Position numbers and translations under genes: made by a program | IMG/VR virus record: IMGVR_UViG_3300024262_006558 | Coordinates: 324,595 to 388,594 of that record | Strand: one strand, 5' to 3' | Length of the DNA stretch: 64,000 nucleotides | Notes under the pieces: generated by a model | Databases searched by the model: none | Seen by the model: only the letters and a program-made list of their open reading frames with translations | Told to the model about the DNA's origin: nothing | In this document: positions 5,980 through 51,789 of the stretch, piece after piece | Position numbering within the stretch: position 1 is the first letter of the stretch | Layout: each line of letters begins with the position of its first letter

Positions 5980-7071
5980 TTAGTCCTCCACAAAAGGAGT
6001 GTTATAAGTTGGTCTCATTTCAGACCATAAAGCACGTTTTACCGATGTTTCAGATCCATATTTCAAAGATAAGAACAAAGATGCGTCTTTCTTACTAATT
6101 TTCCTAGCGTTTATAGCAAAATCTTTTCTATCAATCTTTCCTTCAGATATCATTTTGTCATTAAAAGCTTTAAAATCAGACTTTACCACTGCTAATCTTT
6201 TTTCATATTCTTTATCGAAATCATCGAGAGTCTTATGTATCCAGTCATAAAACTCATCAGGGACCTTGTCTAATATATCATCTAAAGTAAACTTCCATTC
6301 AGGATAATATTCTGGAGCAATTTCAAACATTCTCATTCTCCAAAGGTCCAAATTTGAAATTCCAGTCATTACTCTGTGAAGTCTTACATACTCGTCAAAC
6401 TTCACCTTCAATCTAAACCCGTTCTTAAAAAGAACAACAAATCCTTCTTCATTCTCCACCTCTAAAGCTTCCAACTCTTTGATATCCTTGATACCATCGT
6501 GCTTTTTCGCTATTGGCATACCAATATCCTCTAAAGGTAAGTCTTTACCTGTATCGGTATCTAAAACAGCTAATAGAACTAATTGCCTTTTACCTCTATA
6601 GTCCACAACTATTCTATTATTTGGATAGATTATCTCAAAAATGTAAGTCTTATCTATATTTTCCAATATAGATTTAGATGCGCTTGGATATAGCTCATCC
6701 AACATCTTAGACGCTTCTACAGCCTGGTCTGATGTGAATGATCCTCTAGAGGCCGCGTAAACCTTACCATTTAATACATAAGAAACCCCATAAGATCCAT
6801 CCATCTTAGTGAATACATCAAATGATTCATTAGGTATTTCTTCAGGCTTATGCTGTGACAGGTTAAAGAATTTAGGAAGACATTGAGATACAACTTCCCC
6901 GTTACCATTAAGTATTAAGCCGCGACATGATAATGTAACCTCATTCCAATAATCCTCAAACTGAGCCTTCTTAGAATAATTGTAAATATACAGATCAGCG
7001 CTAGGGTGTTTTTGTGACATCACATAACCCTCTTTGATCATTTCTTCAAAAAGCTCTTTATTAAATACCAT
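5980..7071 (-). CDS. T4 Rnl1-like RNA ligase
   Basis: CRGLI, PKFFN, KMDGS adenylation motif, ASRGSF, FEII, EGFV, RLKVK. Confidence 0.88.
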   Translation of the reverse strand: MVFNKELFEEMIKEGYVMSQKHPSADLYIYNYSKKAQFEDYWNEVTLSCRGLILNGNGEVVSQCLPKFFNLSQHKPEEIPNESFDVFTKMDGSYGVSYVLNGKVYAASRGSFTSDQAVEASKMLDELYPSASKSILENIDKTYIFEIIYPNNRIVVDYRGKRQLVLLAVLDTDTGKDLPLEDIGMPIAKKHDGIKDIKELEALEVENEEGFVVLFKNGFRLKVKFDEYVRLHRVMTGISNLDLWRMRMFEIAPEYYPEWKFTLDDILDKVPDEFYDWIHKTLDDFDKEYEKRLAVVKSDFKAFNDKMISEGKIDRKDFAINARKISKKDASLFLSLKYGSETSVKRALWSEMRPTYNTPFVED

Positions 7072-7125
7072 TATTTCTAAAATTAAATTTAGACAAATGT
7101 AATTAATAAAAGAAGATTTAAAAAA

Positions 7126-7407
7126 TTAAATTGGTTTTATTTCAGATAAACCAATTAATTCTACAATTTCTTCTTCCTCTTCATATTCATATTGAATATA
7201 TCCATTTTTAACTTCAGTAATTTCAATTGTATTACCCTTTTTGATTCCTATTACAAACCCATTTCCGCTTGCTATTTTTCGGATAGCAATTTCCTCCTTT
7301 GAATCTTCAAGAGATTCATTTATCTCTTTATGCCACTTTTTTATTGATGAATCGCTTACTTGTGAACCATCTTCAAACGAATACATGTTATCTAATTTAG
7401 CTTTCAT
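7126..7407 (-). CDS. Hypothetical protein (start probably MKAKLDN)
   Basis: 3' part of ORF 7126..7521; this start gives an 11-nt overlap with the upstream gene. Confidence 0.55.
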   Translation of the reverse strand: MKAKLDNMYSFEDGSQVSDSSIKKWHKEINESLEDSKEEIAIRKIASGNGFVIGIKKGNTIEITEVKNGYIQYEYEEEEEIVELIGLSEIKPI

Positions 7408-7636
7408 CTTTTGTTTTTTTATCACATATTCTTTTGTAAGTAATATTACTTTCTTCATGAAACTTGTCAGAAGAAACTGGAGTGAACTCATGAGGCATTT
7501 CTCCATAAGGAATTTCTTCATCCAACTCTACCACTCCTACAATCTGAAGTATTTGATGAAATCTCAAATCAGGATGTTCTTCTACTAAAATAGTAATTTC
7601 TTCTAATATTTTCTTATTATAACCTTGTCTGCTCAT
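7397..7636 (-). CDS. Hypothetical protein
   Basis: 79 aa, HPDLRFHQIL. Confidence 0.6.
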   Translation of the reverse strand: MSRQGYNKKILEEITILVEEHPDLRFHQILQIVGVVELDEEIPYGEMPHEFTPVSSDKFHEESNITYKRICDKKTKDES

Positions 7637-7652
7637 ATGTATAATGATTAAA

Positions 7653-7681
7653 TCCCATTGCTATTAACAATGGGCTTTATT
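7653..7681 (-). terminator. Rho-independent terminator after PheRS gene
   Basis: cccattg...caatggg hairpin flanked by A/T tracts. Confidence 0.5.
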
Positions 7682-8791
7682 TTATCTTACTTCTACCCCT
7701 AAATTGTCAGTAATAGAATTTTCTATCCTATTATGAATCTCATTTATTTCATCATCTGTTAAAGTTCTGTTTGGAGATCTATATACCAATGAATAACAAA
7801 GAGAGGTTCTATTCGTCTTAGGGTTTGTGAATTTATCAGATAAACTGATAGATTCAATCAAATCATCTCCTTCAGCTCTAGAAATTTCCATGAATTCATT
7901 CTCATGGAATCCTTCAGGAGTCCAGAAAGATATATCTCTATTAACTGGAGGGTATTTAGAATATTCTTTGAACTCAACTACTTGACCTGATGCGAATTGC
8001 TTCAAGAATCTTTCGTCTTCAGTCCAAAAATATCTAATATCCTTTATGTTGAATAAAATCATAGCAAGCCTTTCAAGCCCTAGGCCGAAAGCCCAAGCTT
8101 GTTTACCACCTAACCCAATAGAGGACATTATATCTGGCTCTACAGTTCCACCTCCTAATACTTCTACCCATTTATCTTCTCCACCCATATTGAATAGCAC
8201 CTCTATTTCAGTTGAATCATAGGTGAATGGGAATTCTGTTTCTGGATCGAACTTTTCTTTCTCATATTCTTCTGCAGACAACTCTGCTTTAATAGAATCA
8301 TCAAATTCTTTATTATCTTTGAATCTATATTGTTGTCCAGGGAAAAGTGTCTCCACCATTTTAGACATCCAATGCCTTAATTCTTGAGCTGGATCTTTAT
8401 CAGCAAGACAGAACCCGTCAATCTGATGGAATACTGGAGCGTGCGTAGCGTCTACGGTGTCTTTACGGTAAACATCTCCAGTAACTAAATATTTAGTGTG
8501 ACCTGATTTTACCAAAGGTACTAAGTGAGCAGTCATTTGAGTACGAAGAACCGTTTCTTCATCTTCATAGTAAGTATCTGTAATAGCTCTTGCAGGATGG
8601 TCTTTAGGAACCAGTAACATGTCGAAGCAATGAGCTGCAGGAACTTTAGGTTCTAACCCTTCAATTTTCTCGAACCCTTCAAATACTTCGTAAATTTTTC
8701 TTTTAACAATCTCTAATGGATGGTTCTTTTGTTGGTAGAGATTTCTACCTAGTTTTTGCTTAATAGCATCTGTGATGTTGTTCATACTCAA
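7682..8791 (-). CDS. Phenylalanyl-tRNA synthetase, monomeric mitochondrial (FARS2)-like alpha plus FDX-ACB chimera
   Basis: DHPARAITDTYY, LRTQMTAH, GDVYRKDTVDATHAPVFHQ, FPFT, EVLGGG, AFGLGLERLAM, then YPPVNRDISFW anticodon-binding domain. Confidence 0.92.
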   Translation of the reverse strand: MSMNNITDAIKQKLGRNLYQQKNHPLEIVKRKIYEVFEGFEKIEGLEPKVPAAHCFDMLLVPKDHPARAITDTYYEDEETVLRTQMTAHLVPLVKSGHTKYLVTGDVYRKDTVDATHAPVFHQIDGFCLADKDPAQELRHWMSKMVETLFPGQQYRFKDNKEFDDSIKAELSAEEYEKEKFDPETEFPFTYDSTEIEVLFNMGGEDKWVEVLGGGTVEPDIMSSIGLGGKQAWAFGLGLERLAMILFNIKDIRYFWTEDERFLKQFASGQVVEFKEYSKYPPVNRDISFWTPEGFHENEFMEISRAEGDDLIESISLSDKFTNPKTNRTSLCYSLVYRSPNRTLTDDEINEIHNRIENSITDNLGVEVR

Positions 8792-8831
8792 TTGCTTTTA
8801 TTATGTATATCAAGAACAACAAATATATGGC

Positions 8832-12778: not shown

Positions 12779-13498
12779 ATGAGAAAAAGATTTTACATAA
12801 AACCTGACTTAAAACTTTTCTTAGACCAAGATCCGCTTAGGTTTTCCAGAAGTCAAATAACAGATTTAATTGAAAACCACTTCAATATATATAGCAGTAG
12901 ATTTGGTAAAAACATTCCATTCAAACTAAATAATAATCAGAAACAAATTATTAAATCTGTTTCTGAAAACAAGATAACTGTTATTTCTAAAACTAGACAA
13001 TTAGGCGTTTCTACAGTTATGCAATCAATTTTAACTTTGTTAATGGCTGATGCAGATGTTACTGTTTATTATATTTGTCATAATAAACAGTCTGCTAAAT
13101 CTCGTAAACAATCGATGATATATTTACTTGAATGCTTGAAAGAGTTTGAACTTCAATACAAATCTCCTGACAACCCTTCTTCATTTGATATTATAAAAGA
13201 AACTGAAAATTCTTATACTTTATCAAACTTTAGCAAAATAAAGTTCACAACTTACGATCCTAACCTTTTTAGAGGAAGTAATGCTATGCATGTTTATTTT
13301 GATGAATGTTTACCTAACAATGTAGCTGATGCTATGATTATGTTAGGGCCAATTACGAATGCGATTAAAGGTCATAGAATTATTATATCAAACCCTACAA
13401 GTGAAGCTGAATACATTTCTCAATCTTTGAGAAACTTAAGGCATCATTTTTTAAATATACCTAGAGGTGAATACCATTTATCTCCAGCCACTTACTAG
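12779..13498 (+). CDS. MRKxFY-leader protein with terminase large subunit (gp17-like) ATPase fragment
   Basis: MRKRFY; IPFKLNNNQKQII, SKTRQLGVST, FRGSNAMHVYFDE; 239 aa, no nuclease domain. Confidence 0.72.
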   Translation: MRKRFYIKPDLKLFLDQDPLRFSRSQITDLIENHFNIYSSRFGKNIPFKLNNNQKQIIKSVSENKITVISKTRQLGVSTVMQSILTLLMADADVTVYYICHNKQSAKSRKQSMIYLLECLKEFELQYKSPDNPSSFDIIKETENSYTLSNFSKIKFTTYDPNLFRGSNAMHVYFDECLPNNVADAMIMLGPITNAIKGHRIIISNPTSEAEYISQSLRNLRHHFLNIPRGEYHLSPATY

Positions 13499-13977
13499 CC
13501 ATATGCTTTAATACATCTTAGTATGTATTCAGAATGCTCTCTCCTTCCTGAATCTTCTGGTACTAACCCAATAGATAAATGGAATCCATAAAACGGATCA
13601 CCAAGACCAGCTTCATTTCTAATAGATTGACCTTCGGGACAATTAACTTTTAACCACCAATGAGCAGCGTTTGTTCTCACATTCACATCATAGTAAAATG
13701 TTACTAGTGTTCCGTGATATTTTTCTTTTATAGCTTCAAAGTTTTTAGTTAACTCAGGAGTATTGATCCTATCATTTATGATAGTAACATGATTCCCTCT
13801 AAGAGGTGTATTAAGTTCTAAACCATATCTAGCCTTAACAAACCAAGCATAATATTCTGGAAGATCATCATTAATGATAATCATAGCAGTTCTCTTCCAA
13901 CTACTTTGTTTATTATGCTTCTTTGTTTTATTGTCTGGATCAAAGAAAATTCTACCCGTTAACTTAATTCCTTCCAT
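13495..13977 (-). CDS. Putative 2H phosphoesterase
   Basis: Two HxT/S motifs: NHVTII and FHLSIG. Confidence 0.6.
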   Translation of the reverse strand: MEGIKLTGRIFFDPDNKTKKHNKQSSWKRTAMIIINDDLPEYYAWFVKARYGLELNTPLRGNHVTIINDRINTPELTKNFEAIKEKYHGTLVTFYYDVNVRTNAAHWWLKVNCPEGQSIRNEAGLGDPFYGFHLSIGLVPEDSGRREHSEYILRCIKAYG

Positions 13978-17208: not shown

Positions 17209-17470
17209 ATCTATCTTTTAAAACTTTTTTCTCACCATACCGATCTGTAAACACAATCAAGTCTGCTCTATTCATTCTATTCCTAGAGTCTACAGCCACA
17301 CCGCTTGTAAAGAACGACATACCTGTAGACCTATGGAAGTTAAAGTCATATAAATTAATATCATTTATATGCTTATATCTAGACCCTTTCACCAAATCAT
17401 TCTCAGTTAAATATATTGGTTCCCTATATGGTCTCCACTGTTTGACTGTGTGGTAAAAACGCTTTCTCAT
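17189..17470 (-). CDS. MRKxFY-leader protein; C-terminus resembles SF4 helicase/RecA-fold C-terminal strands
   Basis: MRKRFY; RADLIVF...KVLKDRFGD. Confidence 0.55.
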   Translation of the reverse strand: MRKRFYHTVKQWRPYREPIYLTENDLVKGSRYKHINDINLYDFNFHRSTGMSFFTSGVAVDSRNRMNRADLIVFTDRYGEKKVLKDRFGDYGQ

Positions 17471-18840
17471 ACAGAATAAAACTCTTTACGGATATTAAGA
17501 AGTATTTCTTTACCTTTTTTAGGATCAGAATCTTTAGGCAAATCACTTATAGCATAAGCTTTATCTGATTGCTTCATAAGATCTTCCGCTCCAGACAATA
17601 TAGTATCATAGTCTTGAGCTCCTTTGCGTATCGCTAAGAGCTCTTCTCTATTGTCACGCCTAACGTTAACACCTTTGCCTTCAGCGATCTCTAGAGACAT
17701 CTGTAGAAGCCTATAGCAATGCATCATGTTCTTGGTATCATAACCTTTCTTAGCTGAATCTTTATAACGCTCAGGATTTCTTTCTTCAACCCAGTCCCAA
17801 TATTTTTTATGAGACTTGCAGTGTTGAGTATAAGCATCCTTTGAATAAACAAAGATTGCTACAGACTCTTCAGACTTAGGAACAGAAGAAGATCTAAGAG
17901 AATTAGAAGTCTCATGCATTATCCCTTTGTATCCAAGGCCCATGAATTCACCAGCGTCCTTAGCAATTTTCTTTCTTTCTTTTCTATCCTCTTCGGGAAC
18001 CATTTCAGAAAACATGTTATGCGCAGACCAATCATAAAACAATGCGAAATTATCTTTTGCATTAGGTATACTTACTATACCGCAAAACTTTTGATCATAA
18101 CCATAATGTTCTAATACCTTCTTTAATGGAATAGTCTTATGACCTTCTATTGCATAACAGAAGTCCAATGGAGTTTTTCTAGCTTTTGGCATCTCATTAA
18201 CAATCATTTTGTTTTGCCCTCTAGCTTTTGATATTTGCTTTTTAGCATATCCACCAAATGAATCTTTACATCTTTTTGACAAGAAATCTTTAGCATTAAT
18301 TTGATCTAGTAACTCAGATTTAAATAACACACAATCATCTGGCATGTTTAACAACTCCAACACTGTTGGGTTGTTGCTAGTCAACATATCCATATACTTT
18401 CTAATTTCAAAATAAGAGTAATCATCTTTCTTTCTCAAGAAAGTTTGAATTGGCTCTATACCATCATCACTTACAACAGAAACTCCTTCCTTGTTTTCTA
18501 TAGGAAGTTTGTCTACAATTACATTTTTATATCCTACATCAGAACATTGCTCTTTTAGAAGGTTATGTAATGCTTCTTGCATTTCATCTCTATTTTCCTG
18601 GTTCTCGCTTTTCTCTTTGAATTCTTCGAAAACGTCTTTTACTTGTTTCTTTACAGTACTTTCAATTACGTCTGGATATTCACCTAACAGTACATCATCT
18701 AACTCAGCTACAAAGATACCTCTTCTATCCTCATCTGATGTTTCTATAGCCGTGTTATAAGCGTGTGATCCAGCTATAACTTCTAACAAAAGAAGTTTAT
18801 TCTCTTTGATATACTCTATAGTGTATTTGTCTTTTGACAT
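17467..18840 (-). CDS. DNA polymerase beta-superfamily nucleotidyltransferase (RlaP/YcgL-like)
   Basis: GSHAYNTAIETSDEDRRGIF; NPTVLELL; GYDTKNMMHCYRLL. Confidence 0.8.
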   Translation of the reverse strand: MSKDKYTIEYIKENKLLLLEVIAGSHAYNTAIETSDEDRRGIFVAELDDVLLGEYPDVIESTVKKQVKDVFEEFKEKSENQENRDEMQEALHNLLKEQCSDVGYKNVIVDKLPIENKEGVSVVSDDGIEPIQTFLRKKDDYSYFEIRKYMDMLTSNNPTVLELLNMPDDCVLFKSELLDQINAKDFLSKRCKDSFGGYAKKQISKARGQNKMIVNEMPKARKTPLDFCYAIEGHKTIPLKKVLEHYGYDQKFCGIVSIPNAKDNFALFYDWSAHNMFSEMVPEEDRKERKKIAKDAGEFMGLGYKGIMHETSNSLRSSSVPKSEESVAIFVYSKDAYTQHCKSHKKYWDWVEERNPERYKDSAKKGYDTKNMMHCYRLLQMSLEIAEGKGVNVRRDNREELLAIRKGAQDYDTILSGAEDLMKQSDKAYAISDLPKDSDPKKGKEILLNIRKEFYSV

Positions 18841-22795: not shown

Positions 22796-23524
22796 TTATG
22801 ATAAGAAGAAATCTAATAACCCTTCCGAGGTTTTCTTTTGTTTAGACAAAACGCAATCAATAGACATCTTTTCTCCAGGCTTTATGGTAGCATATGTTAA
22901 TTTACCACCTTTATAACATCCAGTGTCTATATTAATCTTATTAAATACGGTCATATATCCGCAGGCAATATGTCCAAAAAAATGGGATGGATGAATAAGT
23001 GAAGCCTCTTGTTTCAAAAAAGAGAAAAATATTTCGATCTCTTTAATGTAAGCACTTTCTCTATCCGACATCTTTTTAGTTTTCTTGTTCACCTTCCTAT
23101 AAAAGAATTCAACAATTTTATCAACAATAGATTCTGCTCCAGGCATTTTAGGATACATTACATGTTGCTGATACTTCAAACTTTTACCGTGAAGCTTGCC
23201 GATGTATTTATTTCTACATGGAGCATGAGTAACTACAAACTCTTTATGTATATAAAATGATTTAGCATTTTCAACAAGCTCAAAGAACTTTTCTCTTAAC
23301 TCCTCATCATCTTGTAATAAAAGAACTGTGTCAAAGTAGTTCTCAATCAATCCAGGCTCAACAGATTTAGCTGGTATAATACCTTTTAAATATTTGTAAA
23401 CCCAGTTCTCATGATTTCCTACAGTAAGAAAGAACCATTCTTGGTTATTATAAATAAATTCTATAACACCTCTAGAGTCAGGCCCTTTATCTATCCAATC
23501 ACCTAATAATAATATTTTTTTCAT
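22796..23524 (-). CDS. C-terminal half of a split Pnkp-like metallophosphoesterase
   Basis: Starts at motif II LGDWIDKGPDS; GNHE, THA, FGH, IDTG; lacks GDIHG. Confidence 0.8.
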   Translation of the reverse strand: MKKILLLGDWIDKGPDSRGVIEFIYNNQEWFFLTVGNHENWVYKYLKGIIPAKSVEPGLIENYFDTVLLLQDDEELREKFFELVENAKSFYIHKEFVVTHAPCRNKYIGKLHGKSLKYQQHVMYPKMPGAESIVDKIVEFFYRKVNKKTKKMSDRESAYIKEIEIFFSFLKQEASLIHPSHFFGHIACGYMTVFNKINIDTGCYKGGKLTYATIKPGEKMSIDCVLSKQKKTSEGLLDFFLS

Positions 23525-23592
23525 ATTTATAATAGTGTTTAAAAACGCTAGTTTATATTAAAACGTAGTATTATATAAAATGTTGCAAAAAA

Positions 23593-24624
23593 ATGGGAAA
23601 AAGGTGGAATAAAAAAGAAGAAGAATTTTTAAAAGAAAACTATCCTACTCAAGGACTAGAGTATTGTCATAACAAATTAGATAGAAATAAAAAGTCTATA
23701 ATATGTAAAACGAATAAATTAAACCTAAAATTAGAAGATAAGGTTAAATCTAAAATTCTAAAAAAGTTTCGCATTAAAGATGTGAAAGAGTATAAAATAA
23801 ACCCAAATCAATTCTTTAATATCAAATCTAAAAAAGTTGCTTATTTTTTAGGTTTTTTATGGGCTGATGGACATATAACCAAAACTGGGTATAATATTAA
23901 CATAGAAATTAAAAAAGAAGACATGAATTATGTTAAGCCTATATTTGATTCGTTAGGTATATGGGGATACTATGAAAGAAATCGAAACAATTGGGCTACT
24001 CAATCTAAAATAAGTACAAACAATTATCATATACACAAATTTTTAAAAGAAAATGATTACCATATTAAATCTTATGAATCTCCAGATAAAATTTTATCTA
24101 AAATACCTGAATATTTAAAACATTATTTTTTTAGAGGATGGAGTGATGGAGATGGTTGTTTCATAAGTAATCATAATTATCACAATTTTGTTTTAACTGG
24201 TGATAAGTCTCAAAAATGGAATGCAACAAAATTTTTAGTGCAAGAGTTGGGTATTAAAAATTATAGGATAATAATAAATGAGAATAAAAAAAGTTCCTCT
24301 TCATATCTGAAAATATCAAATAAAAAAGATATAGCACTTTTAGGAGATTACCTTTATCAAGGATTCAGTAAAGATAAAATAGGATTACCTAGAAAATATC
24401 ATACATACGAAACAATAAAGGAAAAATCTTCCAAAACTAGATACCTCACACCAGAACAAAGAAATAAAGCAATAGAAAATAACTTAGGAGCAAAAAATCC
24501 AGCTTACAAAAATGTTAATGTTGGTGTGATTACGGAAATGAGAGAAAAAGGTCAAACTCTCCAAAATATAGCTGATCATTTTAATGTTAGCATTTGGACT
24601 ATAAGAACAAGGTTAAAACCTTAG
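23593..24624 (+). mobile_element. LAGLIDADG homing endonuclease inserted antisense in the phosphoesterase gene
   Basis: AYFLGFLWADG and FFRGWSDGDG. Confidence 0.85.
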
Positions 24625-25151
24625 GAGTTATTAACTCCTAAAATTTTATTGTTTACCATATCGATCTCAAACCCATTTTTAACTAATGCTTCTTTAAACT
24701 CTTCTAAGCATCCATGAATATCCCCGACAACAATCCACTCTTTTGTTTCATCTAATTTATGAGTCAACAAAGTTTCATGTGATGTAGAAACTATTTCATT
24801 ATCGATATCCTTTATGAAAATCTCAATCTCTCCTTTTTTCTTAGAGTTCTTTCCAGAAAGTAAAGCCTCATCAAATATCAAAGAAACTAAGTTGTAGTTA
24901 TTTCTATCCGCAATACTTTTGATACCTTTTTTTGTTAAACCATCTTCAGCAATTACAAAATAAGTATTCTTAGGATATTCGGTTGATTTCTCAATCTCAT
25001 CCAAATCACCTAAAATAACAACAGAAGAATCATCTAATGATTTTAATGCTGGATGCAGACGATCTTTTACGAAAGTATCTCTTTCTACATCTGTAGCTCC
25101 AACTAACATTATGATGCTGTGTACTGGAATATCGATTTTTTGTTTCTTCAT
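24621..25151 (-). CDS. N-terminal half of split Pnkp-like protein (degenerate kinase plus GDIHG motif)
   Basis: IPVHSIIMLVGATDVERDTF resembles Pnkp kinase start with a dead P-loop; ends VGDIHGCLEEFKEAL. Confidence 0.75.
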   Translation of the reverse strand: MKKQKIDIPVHSIIMLVGATDVERDTFVKDRLHPALKSLDDSSVVILGDLDEIEKSTEYPKNTYFVIAEDGLTKKGIKSIADRNNYNLVSLIFDEALLSGKNSKKKGEIEIFIKDIDNEIVSTSHETLLTHKLDETKEWIVVGDIHGCLEEFKEALVKNGFEIDMVNNKILGVNNS

Positions 25152-31434: not shown

Positions 31435-32220
31435 CTATTCTTCTAATTGAAATAATTTATTTTCATACACAGGAACTATGCTTGATAAGAATGTCCAATC
31501 CTTAGAGAATATTGGAGGCTCCAACGCTTCCCATCTAGACCTTTTAACTCCAGGCTCTTTTTCATATTCTTTTCTAGCGATCACGGTCCCTCTTTTAAAA
31601 CGAACCTCATAATCATTCCAATTAATCCCTTTCTCAAGCATTAACTTATCTTGAATCTGACCCCCATTCTTGCCTTGCAACTCCTTGTGAGAGAACTGAG
31701 CTTGACCCGCCATTGAAACTGAGTTTCTTGTACAGTCTTGCTGTCTCCAAAGAAAGTAGTTTAATACATCATTTGGATTTGGTATTAGAAAAGCTCTAGA
31801 ATCAAAGTTAGCCCAAATAAAAGAGTCTAACTTGAAACCTTCCTCGGAAATAGCTCTCTTAAGTCTAAGGTTGTTAAAGATAGTTGTTGCTAATGAAGCA
31901 GCTATAGAATTGATCTTATCCACTCTACCATCATATAATTGTTGACTCTTAATGTTCTCAAAATCAGTGAACAATAAAGATATCTCATCAGATTGAGTAT
32001 ATGCCATTCTACAACATTGCAGTTCAGAACATAACTGTCTAGCCGTCTCAATCATATCGTCAGATAAACCAGAATCAAATGGCTTTTCAACCTTTTTAGT
32101 GTACTTTGAAAATTTTTTCCCGTCTAATCTAACTAAAACATAGCTGCGAGGAGACAGTTTAATAGTGGAGGCTGATTCGTATTGTTTTATACGTTCACCT
32201 AATGTTATTTCTTTACTCAT
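31435..32220 (-). CDS. tRNA(His) guanylyltransferase Thg1-like protein
   Basis: RLDGKKFS, YTQSDEISL, FDSR, WRQQDC.RNS. Confidence 0.92.
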   Translation of the reverse strand: MSKEITLGERIKQYESASTIKLSPRSYVLVRLDGKKFSKYTKKVEKPFDSGLSDDMIETARQLCSELQCCRMAYTQSDEISLLFTDFENIKSQQLYDGRVDKINSIAASLATTIFNNLRLKRAISEEGFKLDSFIWANFDSRAFLIPNPNDVLNYFLWRQQDCTRNSVSMAGQAQFSHKELQGKNGGQIQDKLMLEKGINWNDYEVRFKRGTVIARKEYEKEPGVKRSRWEALEPPIFSKDWTFLSSIVPVYENKLFQLEE

Positions 32221-40656: not shown

Positions 40657-41250
40657 TTAGTTTATGTAAAATTTCATTTCTTGTTCAGTGTCACAATTGT
40701 AACTTTTCAAATGCCCTTCTTCACCTTGCATGCCGATGGTGCAAAGAACATACTGAACACCTTCTCTGCCTTCATCTAATTGGGATAATTTGAATTTTTT
40801 TAAAACATCTTCACGATCGGAAATGTATGAATTACGCTGTATTTGTTGAGTAACAATAACTTCATACCCATCTTCTTCCTGAGAAATATTATAAAGGTCT
40901 TCATCTATCTTACCTATAATTTCAAGATAGCTAAGATCATTTTCTGACCCATCTCCTAGAGTTAAATTACCTATACCATCAATAACAATAGAGTCATATC
41001 CTGGATAATTTTTTAACTTCCTAATAATATCATTAACGCTAGATCCTAAATCCAACTCTACAATTTTTATGTTATTACCACCACTTAATAAATTATTACT
41101 ATTAAGTAACATATCCATCCTATTGAGCACATCTTTCATTCTCCACTCAGACACAAAGAAAACAAAATTAGTTTCTGGTCTAGATATCATATGAGCAAGC
41201 AATGAAATGTTATTACCACTCCCAACAGTTCCGCAAAATTTCTTATACAT
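40657..41250 (-). CDS. Degenerate RecA/DnaB-fold protein
   Basis: GTVGSGNN P-loop-like; IVIDGIGNL; VTQQIQR. Confidence 0.45.
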   Translation of the reverse strand: MYKKFCGTVGSGNNISLLAHMISRPETNFVFFVSEWRMKDVLNRMDMLLNSNNLLSGGNNIKIVELDLGSSVNDIIRKLKNYPGYDSIVIDGIGNLTLGDGSENDLSYLEIIGKIDEDLYNISQEEDGYEVIVTQQIQRNSYISDREDVLKKFKLSQLDEGREGVQYVLCTIGMQGEEGHLKSYNCDTEQEMKFYIN

Positions 41251-41773
41251 TTTTTATATATTTTAAAGGTACAAACTCCGTTAAATAAACTCCATTCTCA
41301 GAACGATAAAACACATATCCATCGTTATGCATTCTCTTAGCTTCAATAGTTAATATTGAATGCTCTCCTTTACGAGATCCTACATTATCTGCAGTCTCTA
41401 CATCTTCAGAAAGATGTACAGCATGTCGTTTCATTTTACTAATACCGTCTTCCATAATTAAAGGTACAGTTTTAGTTGCGGTCCCATGATATAGATCAAA
41501 TGGAGGAATAACTGCCTCAAGTTGTAAATCTATATTTTCAACCGAGTGCCCTTGATTCGCTCTTATCTTAGATTTATCTTCACTGAAAGCGAATCTCTTT
41601 TTATTATTTGTTTCAACGATTTCTTCTAATATCTCCATAGTTAACCCTTCAATCTTATCCAGTAGAAAAGACACATCGGCCCAACCATTTTTATCCAACT
41701 CTAAACCAATAGCCTCTGGCTTATGTCTAAGTACTTTTGAAAGTAGTCTAGATGTATTGTTTTTGTTTCCCAT
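41243..41773 (-). CDS. kptA: RNA 2'-phosphotransferase Tpt1/KptA
   Basis: SKVLRHKP, KKRF, IRANQGHS, LYHGT, RHAVHLS, NGVYL. Confidence 0.93.
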   Translation of the reverse strand: MGNKNNTSRLLSKVLRHKPEAIGLELDKNGWADVSFLLDKIEGLTMEILEEIVETNNKKRFAFSEDKSKIRANQGHSVENIDLQLEAVIPPFDLYHGTATKTVPLIMEDGISKMKRHAVHLSEDVETADNVGSRKGEHSILTIEAKRMHNDGYVFYRSENGVYLTEFVPLKYIKNV

Positions 41774-48183: not shown

Positions 48184-48185
48184 TA

Positions 48186-48882: not shown

Positions 48883-49021
48883 ATGCGTGTTCTCTCATTT
48901 CTTTTGCTAATAAATCACGTTTCTCTACACTTATTTCAATTCCATATTGAGACAACTGATCCCAAGGAACTCCCAATACTGTAAGCGCTGGCATATATGC
49001 AAAATAAAACTTCTTTCTCAT
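48848..49021 (-). CDS. MRKxFY-leader protein (57 aa, missed by track) with capsid HGxDAxxEL-like helix
   Basis: MRKKFYFAYMPALTVLGVPWDQLSQYGIEISVEKRDLLAKEMREHAYEKTLLFKRKS*. Confidence 0.68.
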   Translation of the reverse strand: MRKKFYFAYMPALTVLGVPWDQLSQYGIEISVEKRDLLAKEMREHAYEKTLLFKRKS

Positions 49022-49023
49022 TG

Positions 49024-49107
49024 TACTCGAAGAGGGAGTCGAACCCTCATGCCCATAAGGGCGCTAGATCCTAAGTCTAGTGCGTCTACCAATTCCGCCA
49101 TCCGAGC
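49024..49107 (-). tRNA. tRNA-Leu(TAG), canonical type II
   Basis: CTAGA-CT TAG GA-TCTAG, long V arm, A73. Confidence 0.92.
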
Positions 49108-49213
49108 AAGTAAATAAATTTAAACTTTTTTTATGATATTATCAAATTATGCTAATACAAAAAAGCGAAGACTCACGCCCTCGCTTTTAAACTACTATTA
49201 TTTCAAAATGTGA

Positions 49214-49618
49214 TTATTTCTTCTTCAGCATTCTATAAATAGGTTCGAAACCTATTCCAAACGCTAATCTCAATATAACAAAGTCAATAACTAGATTATC
49301 TGTAATAGGTTGAAATAACACCATTCCAGCAAAGAAACATAAAAACATTGCAGCTTGAGCAAAATGCCACCCATCCGTTAATGAGACAAACACTGTCGCG
49401 CTTAATGGAAAACGTTCTTTATATTCTGGAGTAAATTTCCATAAATAATACCATCGCTTTTTATATTCTTTAACTCTTCTTCCCCCTGAGTTGATCTTCC
49501 ACTTTTTCTTCCAACTTTTGGATTTATTCCAGTAGTTGTTTAAGAAACCGTCTTCGGAGCTAACGTCCATTATGGCGTTTGCAGCTCCAGCAAATAATGC
49601 AAATAAAATTGACAACAT
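49214..49618 (-). CDS. Membrane protein
   Basis: Hydrophobic segments; TDGWH motif. Confidence 0.6.
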   Translation of the reverse strand: MLSILFALFAGAANAIMDVSSEDGFLNNYWNKSKSWKKKWKINSGGRRVKEYKKRWYYLWKFTPEYKERFPLSATVFVSLTDGWHFAQAAMFLCFFAGMVLFQPITDNLVIDFVILRLAFGIGFEPIYRMLKKK

Positions 49619-49626
49619 GTTTTTAT

Positions 49627-49812
49627 TTATAAATATGTTGTGTTTTTTGTGCCTCCAGAATTATAATATGTACTTCCAGAATTATAATATGTACTTCCAG
49701 AATTAGGTATATAAGGATCTATACACTCTCTTTCACAACTAAACAATGTCGGGATAAAAATTGTCCCCAATGTTACAATTGATGCTTTTTTTAAAAAATC
49801 TCTCCTATTCAT
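49627..49812 (-). CDS. Small Tat-signal lipoprotein
   Basis: MNRRDFLKK...LFSC; NSGSTYY repeats. Confidence 0.65.
   Translation of the reverse strand: MNRRDFLKKASIVTLGTIFIPTLFSCERECIDPYIPNSGSTYYNSGSTYYNSGGTKNTTYL
49654..49704. repeat. 21-nt tandem repeat inside Tat lipoprotein gene
   Basis: ccagaattataatatgtactt x2 plus partial copy. Confidence 0.8.
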
Positions 49813-49837
49813 AGTATATAAATATACTTATTTTTTG

Positions 49838-49917
49838 TACCCCTGGAGAGACTCGAACTCTCAAAAGCTCTGGGTTTGAACCAGTTATCTGTACCGATTT
49901 GAATAAGCCACAGGGGC
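49838..49917 (-). tRNA. Atypical tRNA with CAA (Leu) anticodon, short V arm, enlarged D region
   Basis: GCCCCTG/CAGGGGT acceptor, CTGG-TT CAA AC-CCAG, GAGAG-TTCGAGT-CTCTC. Confidence 0.75.
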
Positions 49918-49922
49918 GGGAT

Positions 49923-50165
49923 TTAAATTCTTCTTATTAGTTTTTTAAACTTAACACTTATTACTTTGATAGGGTTTATTTTATATGCATGAAAATACAA
50001 CCCAAAAAAGCAAGCTGATAACAGGTAAAAAAAGAAGGTTGTACTCCAGTAAGAATCTGTTAACTTCATCAGCATTGCGAATGCTATATCGTATCCTAGA
50101 GGGTTGAAGAATGTCCCCATTACTAATGCTAGTGTTCCGATCGTTTTTCTGTTCACCTTCATCAT
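49923..50165 (-). CDS. Small membrane protein
   Basis: FFNPLGYD...two TMs. Confidence 0.6.
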   Translation of the reverse strand: MMKVNRKTIGTLALVMGTFFNPLGYDIAFAMLMKLTDSYWSTTFFFYLLSACFFGLYFHAYKINPIKVISVKFKKLIRRI

Positions 50166-50202
50166 CCATTGTTTTCATATTTCGTTTAACATTTATTTAG
50201 TG

Positions 50203-50282
50203 TACCCCTGGAGAGACTCGAACTCTCAAAAGATCTGGGTCTAAGCCAGTTAGCTGTACCGATTTGCATAATCCACAGGGGC
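50203..50282 (-). tRNA. Atypical tRNA with TAG (Leu) anticodon, short V arm
   Basis: Paralog of 49838..49917; loop CT TAG AC. Confidence 0.75.
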
Positions 50283-50350
50283 ATATAATTATAAATAGTC
50301 GTGACTTGTATCCACGGATGTAACCTCTCAACTTTGCGTTCTATTCATTG

Positions 50351-50433
50351 TACCTCAGACAGGATTTGAACCTGCACGCCCATTACGGGCACTGGATTTT
50401 AAGTCCAGCGTGTCTGCGTTCCACCACCGAGGC
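50351..50433 (-). tRNA. tRNA-Leu(TAA), type II
   Basis: CTGGA-CT TAA AA-TCCAG, long V arm, A73. Confidence 0.9.
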
Positions 50434-50446
50434 GTGATGTTTGTTG

Positions 50447-50526
50447 TACCCCTGGCGAGACTCGAACTCGCAATAGCTCTGGGTTTAAGCCAGTTATCTG
50501 TACCGATTTGAATAAGCCACAGGGGC
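50447..50526 (-). tRNA. Atypical tRNA with TAA (Leu) anticodon, short V arm
   Basis: Paralog; loop CT TAA AC; T stem GCGAG/CTCGC covaries. Confidence 0.75.
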
Positions 50527-50531
50527 ATGCT

Positions 50532-50744
50532 TTATTTTTTTACTACCTTTTCAAAAAAGCTAACGGGCATGTCTCCGTTAATTTTCATAAACTCTTCTTC
50601 CGTTAAGCAATCACCATTAGCTTGCCAAGCCGCTTGGCAGAAATCTCTATATTCCCTACCATACTTTCTAGTGATATCCTTAAAGCTGATCTTAAAGTTG
50701 GATTCATCCGACTCAAAGTCAATAATTTCAAATATTCTTTTCAT
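50532..50744 (-). CDS. Hypothetical protein (start MKRIFE; longer ORF call overlaps tRNA)
   Basis: ATG 3 nt after tRNA-Leu(AAG) discriminator. Confidence 0.55.
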   Translation of the reverse strand: MKRIFEIIDFESDESNFKISFKDITRKYGREYRDFCQAAWQANGDCLTEEEFMKINGDMPVSFFEKVVKK

Positions 50745-50746
50745 AG

Positions 50747-50834
50747 TACCTCTACCCAGACTCGAACTGGGAACGTTTCTCATGTTTGCCACGGGTTCTT
50801 AGCCCGCCAGCTTTGCCAATTTGCTCATAGAGGT
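50747..50834 (-). tRNA. tRNA-Leu(AAG), A34
   Basis: GCGGG-CT AAG AA-CCCGT, long V arm, A73. Confidence 0.85.
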
Positions 50835-50843
50835 ATGAATAAA

Positions 50844-50962
50844 TGTTTCAAACAGGACTCGAACCTATATTGTTACGTACCAATCAAGTCAGAGTCAGAG
50901 CCTCCTTCAATATGAGGAAACTAACTTCCAACCTGTGCGCCTACCAATTTCGCCATTGAAAC
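50844..50962 (-). ncRNA. Type II tRNA-like RNA with ~34-nt insertion in anticodon loop
   Basis: GTTTCAA/TTGAAAC acceptor, Leu-like D arm, CAGGT/ACTTG stem enclosing 41 nt, V arm, T arm. Confidence 0.7.
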
Positions 50963-50967
50963 ATTTG

Positions 50968-51040
50968 AGCCTATGACAGGAATCGAACCTGCGACATCTT
51001 CCACACCAAGGAAGTGCTCTACCGACTGAGCTACATAGGC
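50968..51040 (-). tRNA. tRNA-Thr(GGT), G37
   Basis: CTTCC-TT GGT GT-GGAAG. Confidence 0.9.
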
Positions 51041-51045
51041 ATTAG

Positions 51046-51181
51046 TGGAACAGCGGGGAATCGAACCCCTTGCAAGATTTACATTTGACACCTTAAGATA
51101 TCAACAATACTCACTAGGATTTATCACCACTTAACCAAGAGCGATCTTAAGCTCACTAGAGGCTGCAGATAAAACTGCTCC
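51046..51181 (-). ncRNA. 136-nt tRNA-like RNA resembling a tmRNA tRNA-like domain (acceptor plus T arm, no D stem)
   Basis: GGAGCAG/CTGTTCC-A, GGGG-TTCGATT-CCCC, TGCAG/TTGCA closing stem. Confidence 0.65.
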
Positions 51182-51187
51182 GTTTAG

Positions 51188-51259
51188 AGCTACATGCAGG
51201 AATCGAACCCGCCTCTGAAGCTTACAAGGCTCCTGCATCACCGACAATGCTTATGTAGC
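51188..51259 (-). tRNA. tRNA-Thr(TGT)
   Basis: GGAGC-CT TGT AA-GCTTC. Confidence 0.9.
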
Positions 51260-51272
51260 AAGAATAATTTTG

Positions 51273-51403
51273 GGGAGGGGGCTGGACTCGAACCAGCGAC
51301 CTTCTGCTTAACAGGCAATTAGAAGGAAGACAAAACATAGCCTTATTTTTAAGGGGATCATTAAATCTTTTAAGATGCTCTAACCAACTGAGCTACCCCT
51401 CCC
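51273..51403 (-). tRNA. tRNA-Asn(GTT) interrupted by 56-nt insertion in 5' strand of anticodon stem
   Basis: TC[56 nt]TGC-CT GTT AA-GCAGA; intact D, T and acceptor arms; G-1 and C73. Confidence 0.78.
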
Positions 51404-51417
51404 ATTTATTATACTTG

Positions 51418-51505
51418 AGGTACTAGTAAGATTCGAACTTACGATGGAGGATCTCTCCTCGACAGATTTGCAGCCTGCCCCTTTCGCCCACTCAGGCATA
51501 GTACC
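51418..51505 (-). tRNA. tRNA-Cys(GCA) with long variable arm
   Basis: GCAGG-CT GCA AA-TCTGT; V arm GAGGA-GAGA-TCCTC; U73. Confidence 0.85.
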
Positions 51506-51516
51506 ATATATTTTTG

Positions 51517-51590
51517 TGGAGGCACTCGGTAACGATCCGAGATCTCTGGGACTTCAATCCAGCGCATAGACCAATCTTTGCTATGCCTCC
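51517..51590 (-). tRNA. tRNA-Phe(GAA) copy 1, G37
   Basis: CTGGA-TT GAA GT-CCCAG; T loop ATCGTTA. Confidence 0.85.
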
Positions 51591-51604
51591 CTATTATTTT
51601 ATTG

Positions 51605-51789
51605 TGGAGGAAGACGGAATCGAACCGCCGACCAACCCCTCCTACGGGGCCACTCTACCAAGACACCTTTTCAAAACCACCATACAACTTAAACACTTTC
51701 CAAAACCATTATTCATGACTAATGGCTAATTACTTATGTCGTTCTCTAGCTGAATCTACTCCGTTGAAATGTCACTGAGTTACTCCTCC
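51605..51789 (-). ncRNA. tRNA-like RNA with ~113-nt insertion in D loop and irregular anticodon loop (GTAGGA)
   Basis: GGAGGAG/TTCCTCC acceptor, ACTC/GAGT D stem, insert closed by GACATTT/AGGTGTC, intact T arm. Confidence 0.7.

What the first reader, a model, noticed from the sequence alone, without database searches (positions are those of the whole stretch)
5980..51789. Dispersed fungal-type heal-and-seal enzyme set together with interrupted tRNAs
Seen: Rnl1 ligase (5980..7071), 2H phosphoesterase (13495..13977), PNK/HAD (25664..26614), Tpt1/KptA (41243..41773), Thg1-like (31435..32220), split Pnkp-like, plus three tRNA genes with hairpin-closed insertions too short for group I/II introns. 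Known: fungal tRNA splicing uses Trl1 (ligase, kinase, 2H CPDase) then Tpt1; T4 uses Rnl1/Pnk to repair PrrC-cut tRNA. Inference: the phage may splice protein-dependent tRNA introns, perhaps using a host anticodon nuclease or unknown endonuclease as trigger. No splicing endonuclease is recognisable in the window.
Basis: inference. Interest (0 to 1): 0.8.

Follow-up and report, generated by a model that had tools for sequence, protein, structure and literature searches.

The report
Phage RNA-repair kit plus interrupted tRNAs
A giant phage carries the usual set of RNA-mending enzymes and, separately, a tRNA gene split by a short insert at a spot (after nucleotide 28) that turns out to be used again and again in phage tRNA genes, often beside a Ro60-like RNA-binding protein, so it is either a new kind of tRNA intron or a tRNA carrying a built-in protein-docking module.

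Summary
All the enzyme genes named are real: T4-type Rnl1, kinase-HAD Pnkp-like, 2H, Tpt1, Thg1-like, a split metallophosphoesterase, plus RlaP. This is the RNA-repair kit already described for jumbo phages. The ligase is T4-Rnl1-like, not Trl1-like. The window is the last 64 kb of a 389-494 kb phage contig.

One gene in the tRNA cluster is a clean interrupted tRNA: Asn(GUU) with a 56-nt insert after nt 28. Three further genes (50844-50962, 51605-51789, 51046-51181) are tRNA-like, but removing one block gives no canonical tRNA. I found no BHB motif, group I intron, known ribozyme, splicing endonuclease or spliced read.

New result: the nt 28/29 site recurs in about 18 independent phage lineages, including cultured Erwinia jumbo phages. 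The inserts there are conserved 40-57-nt modules, and the split anticodon stem covaries. In 8 lineages a Ro60/TROVE-like gene lies beside them. Their ACAGCAA motif also flanks YrlA-type tRNA-like RNAs next to the same protein family.

The inserts therefore look like tRNA-embedded Ro-binding (Y-RNA-like) modules, or else a new intron class. A link to the repair enzymes is unproven.

The parts
5980..7071 (-). T4-type RNA ligase 1 (Rnl1)
   Evidence: Pfam RNA_lig_T4_1 E 1.4e-13. PDB best hits are T4 Rnl1 2c5u/5tt6, E 1e-19, with the KxDG motif aligned and no Trl1 hit. Homologues occur in 1804 cultured phage records.
13495..13977 (-). Probable 2H phosphoesterase
   Evidence: Pfam 2H-SAK E 2.2e-4, below the cut-off. 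HVT and HLS motifs are about 70 aa apart. PHROG 12204, function unknown. No PDB hit.
17467..18840 (-). RlaP-family nucleotidyltransferase (the family that accompanies RNA ligases)
   Evidence: Pfam RlaP E 1e-13. PHROG 388 nucleotidyltransferase E 2.6e-44.
22796..25151 (-). Metallophosphoesterase split into two ORFs (24621-25151 and 22796-23524) by a LAGLIDADG endonuclease ORF on the + strand (23593-24624)
   Evidence: Metallophos and NinI-like phosphatase hits. Motif I lies in the first ORF and motifs II/III in the second. LAGLIDADG_3 E 6.7e-8.
25664..26614 (-). Bifunctional polynucleotide kinase / HAD 3'-phosphatase (same domain order as T4 Pnkp)
   Evidence: AAA_33 at residues 4-96 and PNK3P at 172-314. 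PDB hits to PNKP phosphatase domains and to a Mucorales kinase.
31435..32220 (-). Thg1-like 3'-5' nucleotidyltransferase
   Evidence: Pfam Thg1 E 7.4e-31 and Thg1C E 1.2e-5.
41243..41773 (-). Tpt1/KptA RNA 2'-phosphotransferase. It overlaps by 8 nt a 197-aa RecA/DnaB-C-like ORF (40657-41250).
   Evidence: Pfam PTS_2-RNA E 1.9e-49. PDB 7kw8 E 2e-54 with the catalytic R, H, R, R aligned. The same gene pair is kept in a relative with 90% aa identity.
49023..52144 (-). tRNA cluster: 10 standard tRNAs (Leu x3, Thr x2, Cys, Phe x2, His x2) plus the aberrant genes listed below
   Evidence: ARAGORN; Rfam.
51273..51402 (-). tRNA-Asn(GUU) gene with a 56-nt insert (51318-51373) after nt 28. The exons are 51374-51402 and 51273-51317. 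The junction is ambiguous by 1 nt.
   Evidence: Rfam tRNA 49.3 bits with the insert looped out. A scan of all block removals gives a perfect 16/16 cloverleaf only at nt 28/29 or 29/30. tRNA-Asn contigs from other organisms align to both exons and skip the insert.
50844..50962 (-). Class-II tRNA-like gene (A73; D arm 91% like the cluster's Leu-UAG). Its anticodon arm is replaced by a hairpin of about 24 bp (50885-50935).
   Evidence: Rfam tRNA 34.2 bits. ARAGORN -i reads it as Ser(GGA) with a 36-nt intron. The best single-block removal scores 13.5/16 and lacks U33. The hairpin has z -2.8. An unspliced copy is present in an RNA-library contig.
51605..51789 (-). tRNA-like element with a 7-bp acceptor stem, a T arm, a D arm split by 113 nt (51662-51774) and a 6-nt 'anticodon' loop
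   Evidence: Parsed from the sequence. It gives only weak tmRNA-acceptor-piece hits in Rfam. The insert is not more structured than shuffled sequence.
51046..51181 (-). tRNA-like element with an acceptor stem and a T arm only. The middle 97 nt are not tRNA-like.
   Evidence: Its 3' part is conserved in an ~89%-identical relative seen in two runs. ARAGORN -m makes a weak permuted-tmRNA call.

Best explanation
Two separate things share this 46-kb stretch.

(1) The dispersed Rnl1, kinase-phosphatase, 2H, Tpt1, Thg1-like, RlaP and metallophosphoesterase genes are the RNA-end repair kit of a huge phage. Most likely they mend tRNAs cut by host anticodon nucleases. In a T4-type branch the kinase-phosphatase heals the ends and Rnl1 seals them. 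In an NAD-dependent branch 2H opens the 2',3'-cyclic phosphate to a 2'-phosphate, which Tpt1 then removes. Thg1-like and RlaP refill lost end nucleotides. All of this is inferred from family membership.

(2) The tRNA cluster holds one canonical tRNA gene, Asn-GUU, carrying a 56-nt insert after nt 28, and three tRNA-like genes with non-canonical arms. The nt 28/29 site defines a widespread class of phage tRNA genes that carry 40-57-nt conserved modules. This class is not described in the library I could search. In 8 of about 18 lineages the modules lie beside a Ro60/TROVE-like RNA-binding protein gene, and they share the ACAGCAA motif with YrlA-type tRNA-like RNAs.

I therefore read the interrupted and aberrant genes as tRNA-derived RNAs that carry a protein-docking module. 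They would be kin of bacterial Y RNAs that work as RNPs alongside RNA repair, rather than classical introns spliced by the repair enzymes. Whether the window's own insert binds such a protein, and whether it is ever excised, is not shown.
For: Enzyme identities. The same kit is described in jumbo phages as repair (PMC7824862; PMC9503650).

Insert site: one search gives 24 unique and 4 near-unique parses at nt 28/29 among 122 IMG/VR hits. Cultured Erwinia phage pEa_SNUABM_50 has tRNA-Lys and tRNA-Glu genes with the same site.

Split stem: 98.7% of cells are paired and 0/500 shuffles reach that value. L042 and L046 have an identical insert but a compensatory change at pair 29:41.

Protein link: DUF2828/PHROG 850 'RNA-binding protein' lies next to type 1 inserts in 5 lineages, and TROVE+vWA_Ro60 next to type 2 inserts in 3 lineages. 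DUF2828 proteins match a TROVE profile. ACAGCAA flanks permuted tRNA-like domains next to the same protein in FelixO1-like and mycobacteriophages. Y RNAs beside Ro60 are known to mimic tRNA (PMC4201824).

Negative results in the window: no BHB, group I or ribozyme hit and no endonuclease.
Against: The window's insert has neither the ACWGCAA nor the GUUACUU motif. Its fold is no better than shuffled sequence (z -1.3).

No Ro60 or DUF2828 gene lies in the 64-kb window or in the next 10 kb. The other ~420 kb of the genome could not be read.

The exons of the Asn gene and of most class members keep a perfect 7-nt anticodon loop with U33 and R37. A pure docking RNA would not need these; YrlA lacks an anticodon arm. 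This favours a decoding tRNA, and hence removal of the insert.

The Asn gene is the only tRNA-Asn in the cluster.

The repair role of the enzymes is inferred from homology only.
Confidence: 0.42

Rival explanations
1. True protein-dependent tRNA introns. An unknown endonuclease cuts both sides of the insert at the three-way junction in the anticodon stem. The phage kinase-phosphatase or 2H heals the ends, Rnl1 seals them, and Tpt1 clears any 2'-phosphate. The result is a decoding tRNA.
For: Removing the insert gives a perfect canonical tRNA. The site is constant across many tRNA identities, as expected of an enzyme that measures from the tRNA body. The split stem covaries. The interrupted gene is the only Asn tRNA in the cluster. 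A complete heal-and-seal set is encoded. Serratia phage BF, whose genus carries such inserts, is reported to link 2H, cREC and a PIN endoRNase (PMC9503650).
Against: No endonuclease candidate and no BHB motif were found. The ligase is T4-like and needs no 2'-phosphate. The enzymes are scattered and occur in thousands of phages that have no such inserts. The only RNA-library contig over an aberrant gene is unspliced. The Erwinia phage has an uninterrupted Glu(UUC) gene beside the interrupted one. The largest sub-family has anticodon GCU but no long variable arm, so it is unlikely to be a working tRNA-Ser.
Confidence: 0.25
2. Dead or decaying tRNA genes. The inserts would be scars of mobile DNA, for example events linked to the homing endonucleases common in phage tRNA clusters, with no RNA-level function.
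For: HNH endonuclease ORFs sit next to interrupted tRNAs in 4 lineages. The window is rich in homing endonucleases that split genes. Three of the four aberrant window genes give no canonical tRNA. The window's insert is weakly structured.
Against: The exons are intact in about 18 lineages. Insert motifs are invariant while the hairpin varies in a compensatory way within the 12-member sub-family. There is a compensatory exon change at pair 29:41. No other copy of any insert exists in the window.
Confidence: 0.2
3. A small self-processing RNA: an unknown ribozyme in the insert cuts and rejoins the tRNA without protein.
For: Sub-families share a conserved single-stranded motif next to a hairpin. 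Self-cleaving ribozymes leave the 5'-OH and cyclic-phosphate ends that the encoded enzymes heal.
Against: Rfam gives no match to any known ribozyme even at E up to 1-10. Two cuts plus a ligation by a 40-57-nt RNA has no precedent. The sub-families and the window's insert share no common motif.
Confidence: 0.05

Closest known systems
Jumbo-phage RNA repair kit (Iyer, Anantharaman, Krishnan, Burroughs & Aravind 2021, PMC7824862; 2022, PMC9503650)
   Same: The same families occur together: Rnl1, PNK-HAD, 2H, KptA/Tpt1, RlaP and Thg1, alongside many tRNAs and NAD/ADP-ribose enzymes.
   Different: Nothing essential differs. Here the genes are dispersed rather than in one operon, and one phosphoesterase is split by a homing endonuclease.
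Phage T4 Rnl1 + Pnkp repair of PrrC-cut tRNA-Lys
   Same: The ligase is closest to T4 Rnl1. The kinase-phosphatase has the T4 domain order.
   Different: The phosphatase is closer to the PNKP/HisB HAD type. A 2H/Tpt1 branch, Thg1-like and RlaP are added. The host nuclease is unknown.
Fungal/plant Trl1-Tpt1 tRNA splicing
   Same: A kinase, a 2H-type esterase, an ATP-dependent ligase and Tpt1 are all encoded. An interrupted tRNA gene is present.
   Different: There is no Sen/EndA endonuclease. The insert is not at nt 37/38. The ligase is not of Trl1 type. The three activities are on separate proteins.
Bacterial and phage Y RNAs (YrlA) with Ro60 (Chen et al. 2014, PMC4201824; Thermus phage phiLo, PMC12135203)
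   Same: These are tRNA-mimicking RNAs encoded beside a Ro60-like protein and tied to RNA repair operons. One known Y RNA has a 6-nt 'anticodon' loop, as does the window element at 51605-51789.
   Different: YrlA is circularly permuted and lacks an anticodon arm. The class found here is a full tRNA in normal order with the module inserted after nt 28. The window itself shows no Ro60 gene and no known Ro-binding motif.
Archaeal non-canonical BHB tRNA introns
   Same: They are short introns at positions other than 37/38, including inside stems.
   Different: No bulge-helix-bulge can be drawn at any of the window junctions, and no EndA is found. The hosts of the cultured examples are bacteria.

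Membership tests
Fungal/plant heal-and-seal tRNA splicing (Trl1 + Tpt1 + Sen) | tRNA splicing endonuclease (Sen/EndA) | tested here: not met
   No tRNA_int_endo or related domain in any window ORF of 100 aa or more. The rest of the genome was not readable.
Fungal/plant heal-and-seal tRNA splicing (Trl1 + Tpt1 + Sen) | Intron one nucleotide 3' of the anticodon (37/38) | tested here: not met
   The Asn gene's insert is at nt 28/29. The 50844-50962 gene fits 37/38 only with a 4-bp stem and a mismatch.
Fungal/plant heal-and-seal tRNA splicing (Trl1 + Tpt1 + Sen) | Trl1-type ligase domain that requires a 2'-phosphate | tested here: not met
   The PDB sequence search returns only T4 Rnl1 entries, although Trl1 ligase structures are in the PDB. 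2'-phosphate dependence itself cannot be tested here.
Fungal/plant heal-and-seal tRNA splicing (Trl1 + Tpt1 + Sen) | Tpt1 with the R-H-R-R catalytic tetrad | tested here: met
   Pfam E 1.9e-49. The alignment to 7kw8 keeps RH, R and R.
Fungal/plant heal-and-seal tRNA splicing (Trl1 + Tpt1 + Sen) | 2H cyclic phosphodiesterase with two HxT/S motifs | tested here: inconclusive
   Both motifs are present, but the Pfam score is below the cut-off and there is no PDB relative.
T4 Rnl1/Pnkp tRNA repair | Rnl1 adenylyltransferase with the KxDG lysine motif | tested here: met
   KMDG aligns with T4 KEDG, E 1e-19.
T4 Rnl1/Pnkp tRNA repair | Bifunctional 5'-kinase / 3'-phosphatase, kinase at the N end | tested here: met
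   AAA_33 at residues 4-96 and PNK3P at 172-314.
T4 Rnl1/Pnkp tRNA repair | A host anticodon nuclease that makes the breaks | not testable with these tools
   The host is unknown. The source is a metagenomic contig from a subsurface sample.
Archaeal BHB introns | Two 3-nt bulges separated by a 4-bp helix at the splice sites | tested here: not met
   Junction sequences and minimum-energy folds allow no such motif for any of the three genes.
Group I / known self-cleaving ribozymes | Match to the family's covariance model; length of 200 nt or more for group I | tested here: not met
   The inserts are 36-113 nt. There is no Rfam hit at E up to 1-10.
Y RNA / YrlA with Ro60 | Ro60/TROVE gene within about 4 kb on the same strand | tested here: not met
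   Local TROVE and DUF2828 profiles find nothing in the window. None is present in the 10 kb beyond its end.
Y RNA / YrlA with Ro60 | tRNA-like domain | tested here: met
   Acceptor stem, T arm and D arm are present in the aberrant genes. No permuted YrlA-type arrangement was found.
Y RNA / YrlA with Ro60 | Ro-binding motif (GNCGAA type, or the ACAGCAA found here next to DUF2828 genes) | tested here: not met
   No ACWGCAA on the gene strand in 48500-52500.
nt 28/29-insert tRNA genes of phages (class defined here) | Canonical tRNA restored by removing one block after nt 28; insert of 40-57 nt | tested here: met
   The window's Asn gene scores 16/16 at nt 28/29 or 29/30 with a 56-nt insert.
nt 28/29-insert tRNA genes of phages (class defined here) | Sub-family motif (ACWGCAA after a hairpin, or ACCUGUCC...GGGUUACUU) | tested here: not met
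   Neither motif is in the window's insert.

The most novel reading that the evidence does not exclude
Phages of many lineages, including cultured Erwinia jumbo phages, carry a previously unrecognised class of short tRNA introns placed after nt 28 in the anticodon stem. These would be removed by a protein machinery that uses a Ro60-like RNA-binding protein to mark the insert and phage RNA-repair enzymes (Rnl1/Pnkp or 2H/Tpt1) to rejoin the exons. That would be a bacterial-virus counterpart of eukaryotic and archaeal enzymatic tRNA splicing.
Probability: 0.2. Interest if true: 0.9.

Novelty: new variant of a known kind. Interest (0 to 1): 0.62.

Why it matters
Enzymatic tRNA splicing is thought to be absent from bacteria and their viruses; their tRNA introns are self-splicing group I RNAs. 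A site-specific, structured 40-57-nt insert after nt 28 occurs in many phage tRNA genes, including those of phages that can be grown in the laboratory.

If the insert is excised, bacterial viruses have a protein-dependent tRNA splicing pathway. That would finally give a natural substrate for phage and bacterial Tpt1 and 2H enzymes.

If the insert is retained, these RNAs are a new architecture of Ro60-partnered Y RNA built on a complete tRNA. That would help explain what the tRNA-like half of bacterial Y RNAs is for, and what the very common phage DUF2828 'RNA-binding protein' binds.

In practice, these genes are now mis-annotated. In the Erwinia phage a Glu tRNA is labelled Phe(aaa).

Tried and rejected
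BHB motif at all junctions: none.

Group I introns and all Rfam ribozymes, at permissive E-values: none.

Inserts as repeated mobile elements: no second copy of any insert in the window.

Similarity of the inserts to the adjacent CRISPR repeat, as a possible Cas6 substrate: only a 9-nt chance match.

tmRNA reading of 51046-51181 and 51605-51789: weak ARAGORN and Rfam partial hits, no G3:U70, no pseudoknots, so rejected.

Close relatives carrying the same tRNA: exact-exon scans of IMG/VR and JGI metagenomes returned only this genome. The one relative at 90% aa identity has a contig that ends before the tRNA cluster.

Public reads: no run holds more than about 10% of the region apart from the source sample. 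No spliced joint was seen; the listed joints are tRNAs of other organisms.

The 197-aa ORF coupled to Tpt1 as the missing endonuclease: it has a RecA/DnaB-C-like fold.

Ro60/DUF2828 in the window: none.

Literature searches for phage tRNA introns of this kind, or for a DUF2828 RNA partner: nothing found in the held library.

Full report
Setting. The window is the last 64 kb of IMG/VR contig IMGVR_UViG_3300024262_006558 (388.6 kb). The same sequence is part of JGI contig Ga0210003_1000004 (494 kb), from a subsurface metagenome. Nearly all genes are on the minus strand. No cultured phage is close at the DNA level. One relative with 90% protein identity exists in a Logan assembly and keeps the Tpt1 neighbourhood, but its contig stops before the tRNA cluster.

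The enzymes.
- 5980-7071 is a T4-type RNA ligase 1: Pfam E 1.4e-13, and T4 Rnl1 structures are the only PDB hits at E 1e-19, with the KxDG lysine motif aligned.
- 25664-26614 has a P-loop kinase at the N end and a PNKP-type HAD phosphatase at the C end, the T4 Pnkp domain order.
- 41243-41773 is a strong Tpt1/KptA: E 1.9e-49, and 7kw8 at E 2e-54 with the catalytic R-H-R-R residues in place.
- 31435-32220 is Thg1-like.
- 13495-13977 is only a weak 2H match, but it carries both HxT/S motifs.
- The 'split Pnkp-like' gene is a metallophosphoesterase. Motif I lies in 24621-25151 and motifs II/III in 22796-23524, with a LAGLIDADG ORF on the other strand between them.
- I add an RlaP nucleotidyltransferase at 17467-18840.

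Context of the enzymes. The surrounding genes include a monomeric PheRS, a GluRS, an NAD-dependent DNA ligase, PARG, NADAR and a PRPP-synthetase-like gene. This combination is what Iyer et al. describe for jumbo phages as RNA repair and NAD-linked counter-defence. They name Rnl1, PNK-HAD, 2H, KptA, RlaP and Thg1 explicitly (PMC7824862; PMC9503650). Rnl1 homologues occur in 1804 cultured phage records. The enzyme half of the finding is therefore real but already known. 'Fungal-type' is not the right label, because the ligase is T4-like and a T4-style healing enzyme is present.

The tRNA cluster (49023-52144, minus strand). ARAGORN finds ten ordinary tRNAs. Rfam adds three more.

The clean case is 51273-51402. 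Its exons make a textbook tRNA-Asn(GUU) with U8, A14, G18G19, a CUGUUAA loop and a TTCGAGT T loop, interrupted by 56 nt. I tried every possible single-block removal. A perfect 5-bp anticodon stem with a 7-nt loop (16/16) arises only if the block lies after nt 28 or nt 29. ARAGORN's alternative, Gly(GCC) with the intron in the loop, gives a worse cloverleaf. In the read-laying experiment, tRNA-Asn contigs of other organisms aligned to both exons and skipped the insert, which confirms the exon assignment.

The second gene, 50844-50962, has a class-II body, A73 and a D arm 91% like the cluster's Leu-UAG gene. However, its anticodon arm plus insert folds into one ~24-bp hairpin (z -2.8), and no single removal gives a loop with U33.

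The third gene, 51605-51789, has a 7-bp acceptor stem, a T arm and a D arm (ACTC-AG...TTGGTA-GAGT) split by 113 nt. Its 'anticodon' hairpin has a 6-nt loop, and Rfam does not score it as tRNA. Its insert is no more structured than shuffled sequence.

A fourth element, 51046-51181, has only an acceptor stem and a T arm. I found no BHB motif, no group I or ribozyme match and no second copy of any insert.

Reads. Only the source sample holds most of the region. One metatranscriptome contig (355 nt, one mismatch) covers 50579-50933 in unspliced form. Another, 157 nt long, matches 51264-51316 exactly and then diverges at the 3' exon boundary of the Asn gene. No spliced joint was listed. This neither shows nor excludes splicing.

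The wider class. I scanned IMG/VR for a class-I D arm followed 55-85 nt later by a T loop. Of 122 matches, 24 have a unique best parse with the insert after nt 28. Four more, including the window's gene, are ambiguous between nt 28/29 and 29/30. Nine have the canonical 37/38 site, mostly Tyr genes of giant-virus type. Most of the rest are adjacent-tRNA artefacts. The 28/29 genes fall into about 18 independent lineages with many anticodons (Asn, Asp, Phe, Gly, Cys, Thr, Arg, Pro, Lys, Glu), on contigs of 5-427 kb.

The same architecture is present in a cultured jumbo phage, Erwinia phage pEa_SNUABM_50. It has a 122-nt tRNA-Lys(UUU), and a 116-nt gene annotated Phe(aaa) that is really Glu(UUC).

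The split anticodon stem is kept paired across the insert: 98.7% of cells are paired, no shuffle out of 500 reaches this, and slid controls give 31-47%. Two 412-kb contigs have identical 54-nt inserts but a compensatory T-A to A-T change at pair 29:41.

Two insert sub-families stand out.
- Type 1 is an A-rich leader, a variable 6-8-bp hairpin, the motif ACWGCAA and a U-rich tail.
- Type 2 is TAAAAA-ACCUGUCC...GGGUUACUU.

The window's insert has neither motif.

Link to Ro60-like proteins. Clustering the ORFs around these genes gave one dominant neighbour. In five type 1 lineages it is a ~500-aa DUF2828+DUF7788(vWA) protein, PHROG 850 'RNA-binding protein', usually within 1 kb. In three type 2 lineages it is a genuine Ro60 (TROVE + vWA_Ro60). 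A TROVE profile built from the latter matches the DUF2828 proteins.

The DUF2828 protein occurs in 711 cultured phage records. These include Eneladusvirus, the genus of the Erwinia phage, as well as FelixO1-like phages and mycobacteriophages, where it is annotated 'Ro-like RNA binding protein'. In Escherichia phage finno and Mycobacterium phage Appletree2, the gap next to this gene holds two or three copies of the ACAGCAA motif or a near variant of it. These flank a circularly permuted tRNA-like domain, which is the known YrlA layout.

Bacterial and phage Y RNAs are known to be encoded beside Ro60, to mimic tRNA and to sit in RNA-repair operons (PMC4201824; PMC12135203). The published search discarded candidates that overlapped tRNA genes. 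I found no paper on tRNAs with embedded modules or on the RNA partner of DUF2828.

Interpretation. The 28/29 inserts are functional RNA modules, and in many phages they are tied to a Ro60-like protein. The simplest reading is that they are docking sites and the RNAs are a new, non-permuted form of tRNA-like Y RNA. Several observations fit this reading:
- several such genes cluster at one Ro locus;
- an uninterrupted Glu gene sits beside the interrupted one in the Erwinia phage;
- the largest sub-family has anticodon GCU without the long arm that SerRS needs.

Against it, the anticodon loops stay canonical in nearly all members, which a pure docking RNA should not need. The window's Asn gene is also the only Asn tRNA in its cluster. 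Excision therefore remains a live possibility.

For the window itself the link is by insertion site only. There is no Ro-like gene in the window or in the 10 kb beyond it, no shared motif, and a weakly structured insert. About 420 kb of the genome could not be inspected. Nothing ties the repair enzymes to the inserts. The ORF translationally coupled to Tpt1 has a RecA/DnaB-like fold and is not a nuclease. The other nuclease-like genes near the cluster are Cas6 of a phage-borne type I-F-variant CRISPR system and a YkuK-type RNase H-like protein. I give the repair-kit-plus-docking-module reading 0.42, true enzymatic splicing 0.25, dead genes 0.2 and a self-processing RNA 0.05.

Verdict. The enzyme set is ordinary for a huge phage. 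The interrupted tRNA is real and led to a recurrent class of nt 28/29 inserts, apparently undescribed, that can be tested directly in cultured phages.

Noticed in passing
window 52455-58494 (minus strand): Phage-borne type I-F-variant CRISPR-Cas directly upstream of the tRNA cluster. It comprises Cas3 HD-helicase 56272-58494, Cas7fv-like 55154-56230, a 327-aa ORF 54174-55157, Cas6 53455-54183, a leader, and an array of about 13 repeats of 36 nt with 30-nt spacers at 52455-53345. No cas1/cas2 was seen. One spacer occurs twice.
   Followed up: partly
window 49836-49917, 50201-50282, 50446-50527 (minus); L003 about 1355-1432 (minus): Three paralogous odd tRNA-like genes have Leu-type acceptor ends (A73) and anticodons CAA, UAG and UAA, but a short variable arm and an enlarged D region. 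A fourth member, with anticodon CAG, is in an unrelated GC-rich viral contig. They stand beside normal tRNA-Leu genes with the same anticodons.
   Followed up: partly
window 51417-51505 (minus): A tRNA-Cys(GCA) with U73 but a long, class-II-like variable arm (89 nt).
   Followed up: no
window 46979-49021 (minus); L005 79-1967: A run of eight small ORFs that all begin MRKxFY (mostly MRKxFYxxYN) and are otherwise unrelated. The same run is kept in the relative. The shared start may be a DNA or RNA signal rather than a protein motif.
   Followed up: partly
window 7682-8791 and 10012-11589 (minus): The phage encodes a monomeric, mitochondrial-type PheRS (class II core plus FDX-ACB domain) and a GluRS/GlnRS-family enzyme.
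   Followed up: no
window 11670-13498, 18834-19928, 23593-24624 (plus): Three homing-endonuclease ORFs (one NUMOD type, two LAGLIDADG) lie on the opposite strand to the surrounding genes. One splits a phosphoesterase gene. A truncated Terminase_6N-like ORF sits next to the NUMOD one, as reported for RaK2-like jumbo phages.
   Followed up: partly
window 26663-45416 (minus): An NAD/ADP-ribose island surrounds Tpt1: a PRPP-synthetase-like gene, an NAD-dependent DNA ligase, microbial PARG, isochorismatase-like ORFs, an AAA_28 kinase and NADAR. It also holds a vWA-PP2C-Ser/Thr kinase module, whose genes are homologous to those that follow the Ro-like gene in the L065 group of viral contigs.
   Followed up: partly
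window 51131-51166 (minus): Inside the tRNA-like element 51046-51181, ARAGORN reads a tag-like ORF, AASSELKIALG*, starting with GCA and calls a weak permuted tmRNA. There is no G3:U70 and there are no pseudoknots.
   Followed up: partly
window 51264-51316: A 157-nt contig from a marine metatranscriptome (run X7) matches the 3' exon of the interrupted Asn gene plus 9 nt of flank exactly. It then diverges right at the exon boundary. This could be a relative with another insert, an intron-less allele or a chimera. The contig sequence could not be retrieved.
   Followed up: no
L126 5769-6202 (Escherichia phage finno); L127 4410-4773 (Mycobacterium phage Appletree2): Unannotated gaps next to the DUF2828 'Ro-like' gene hold the ACAGCAA motif, or a one-base variant of it, two or three times. 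The copies flank a circularly permuted tRNA-like domain (T arm, closed acceptor hairpin, D arm). These are probably Y-RNA-like partners of this protein family.
   Followed up: partly
L122 1349-1464 (Erwinia phage pEa_SNUABM_50, record 294098-294213): The gene annotated tRNA-Phe(aaa) is a tRNA-Glu(UUC) with a 42-nt insert after nt 28. The annotation follows a wrong intron placement.
   Followed up: yes
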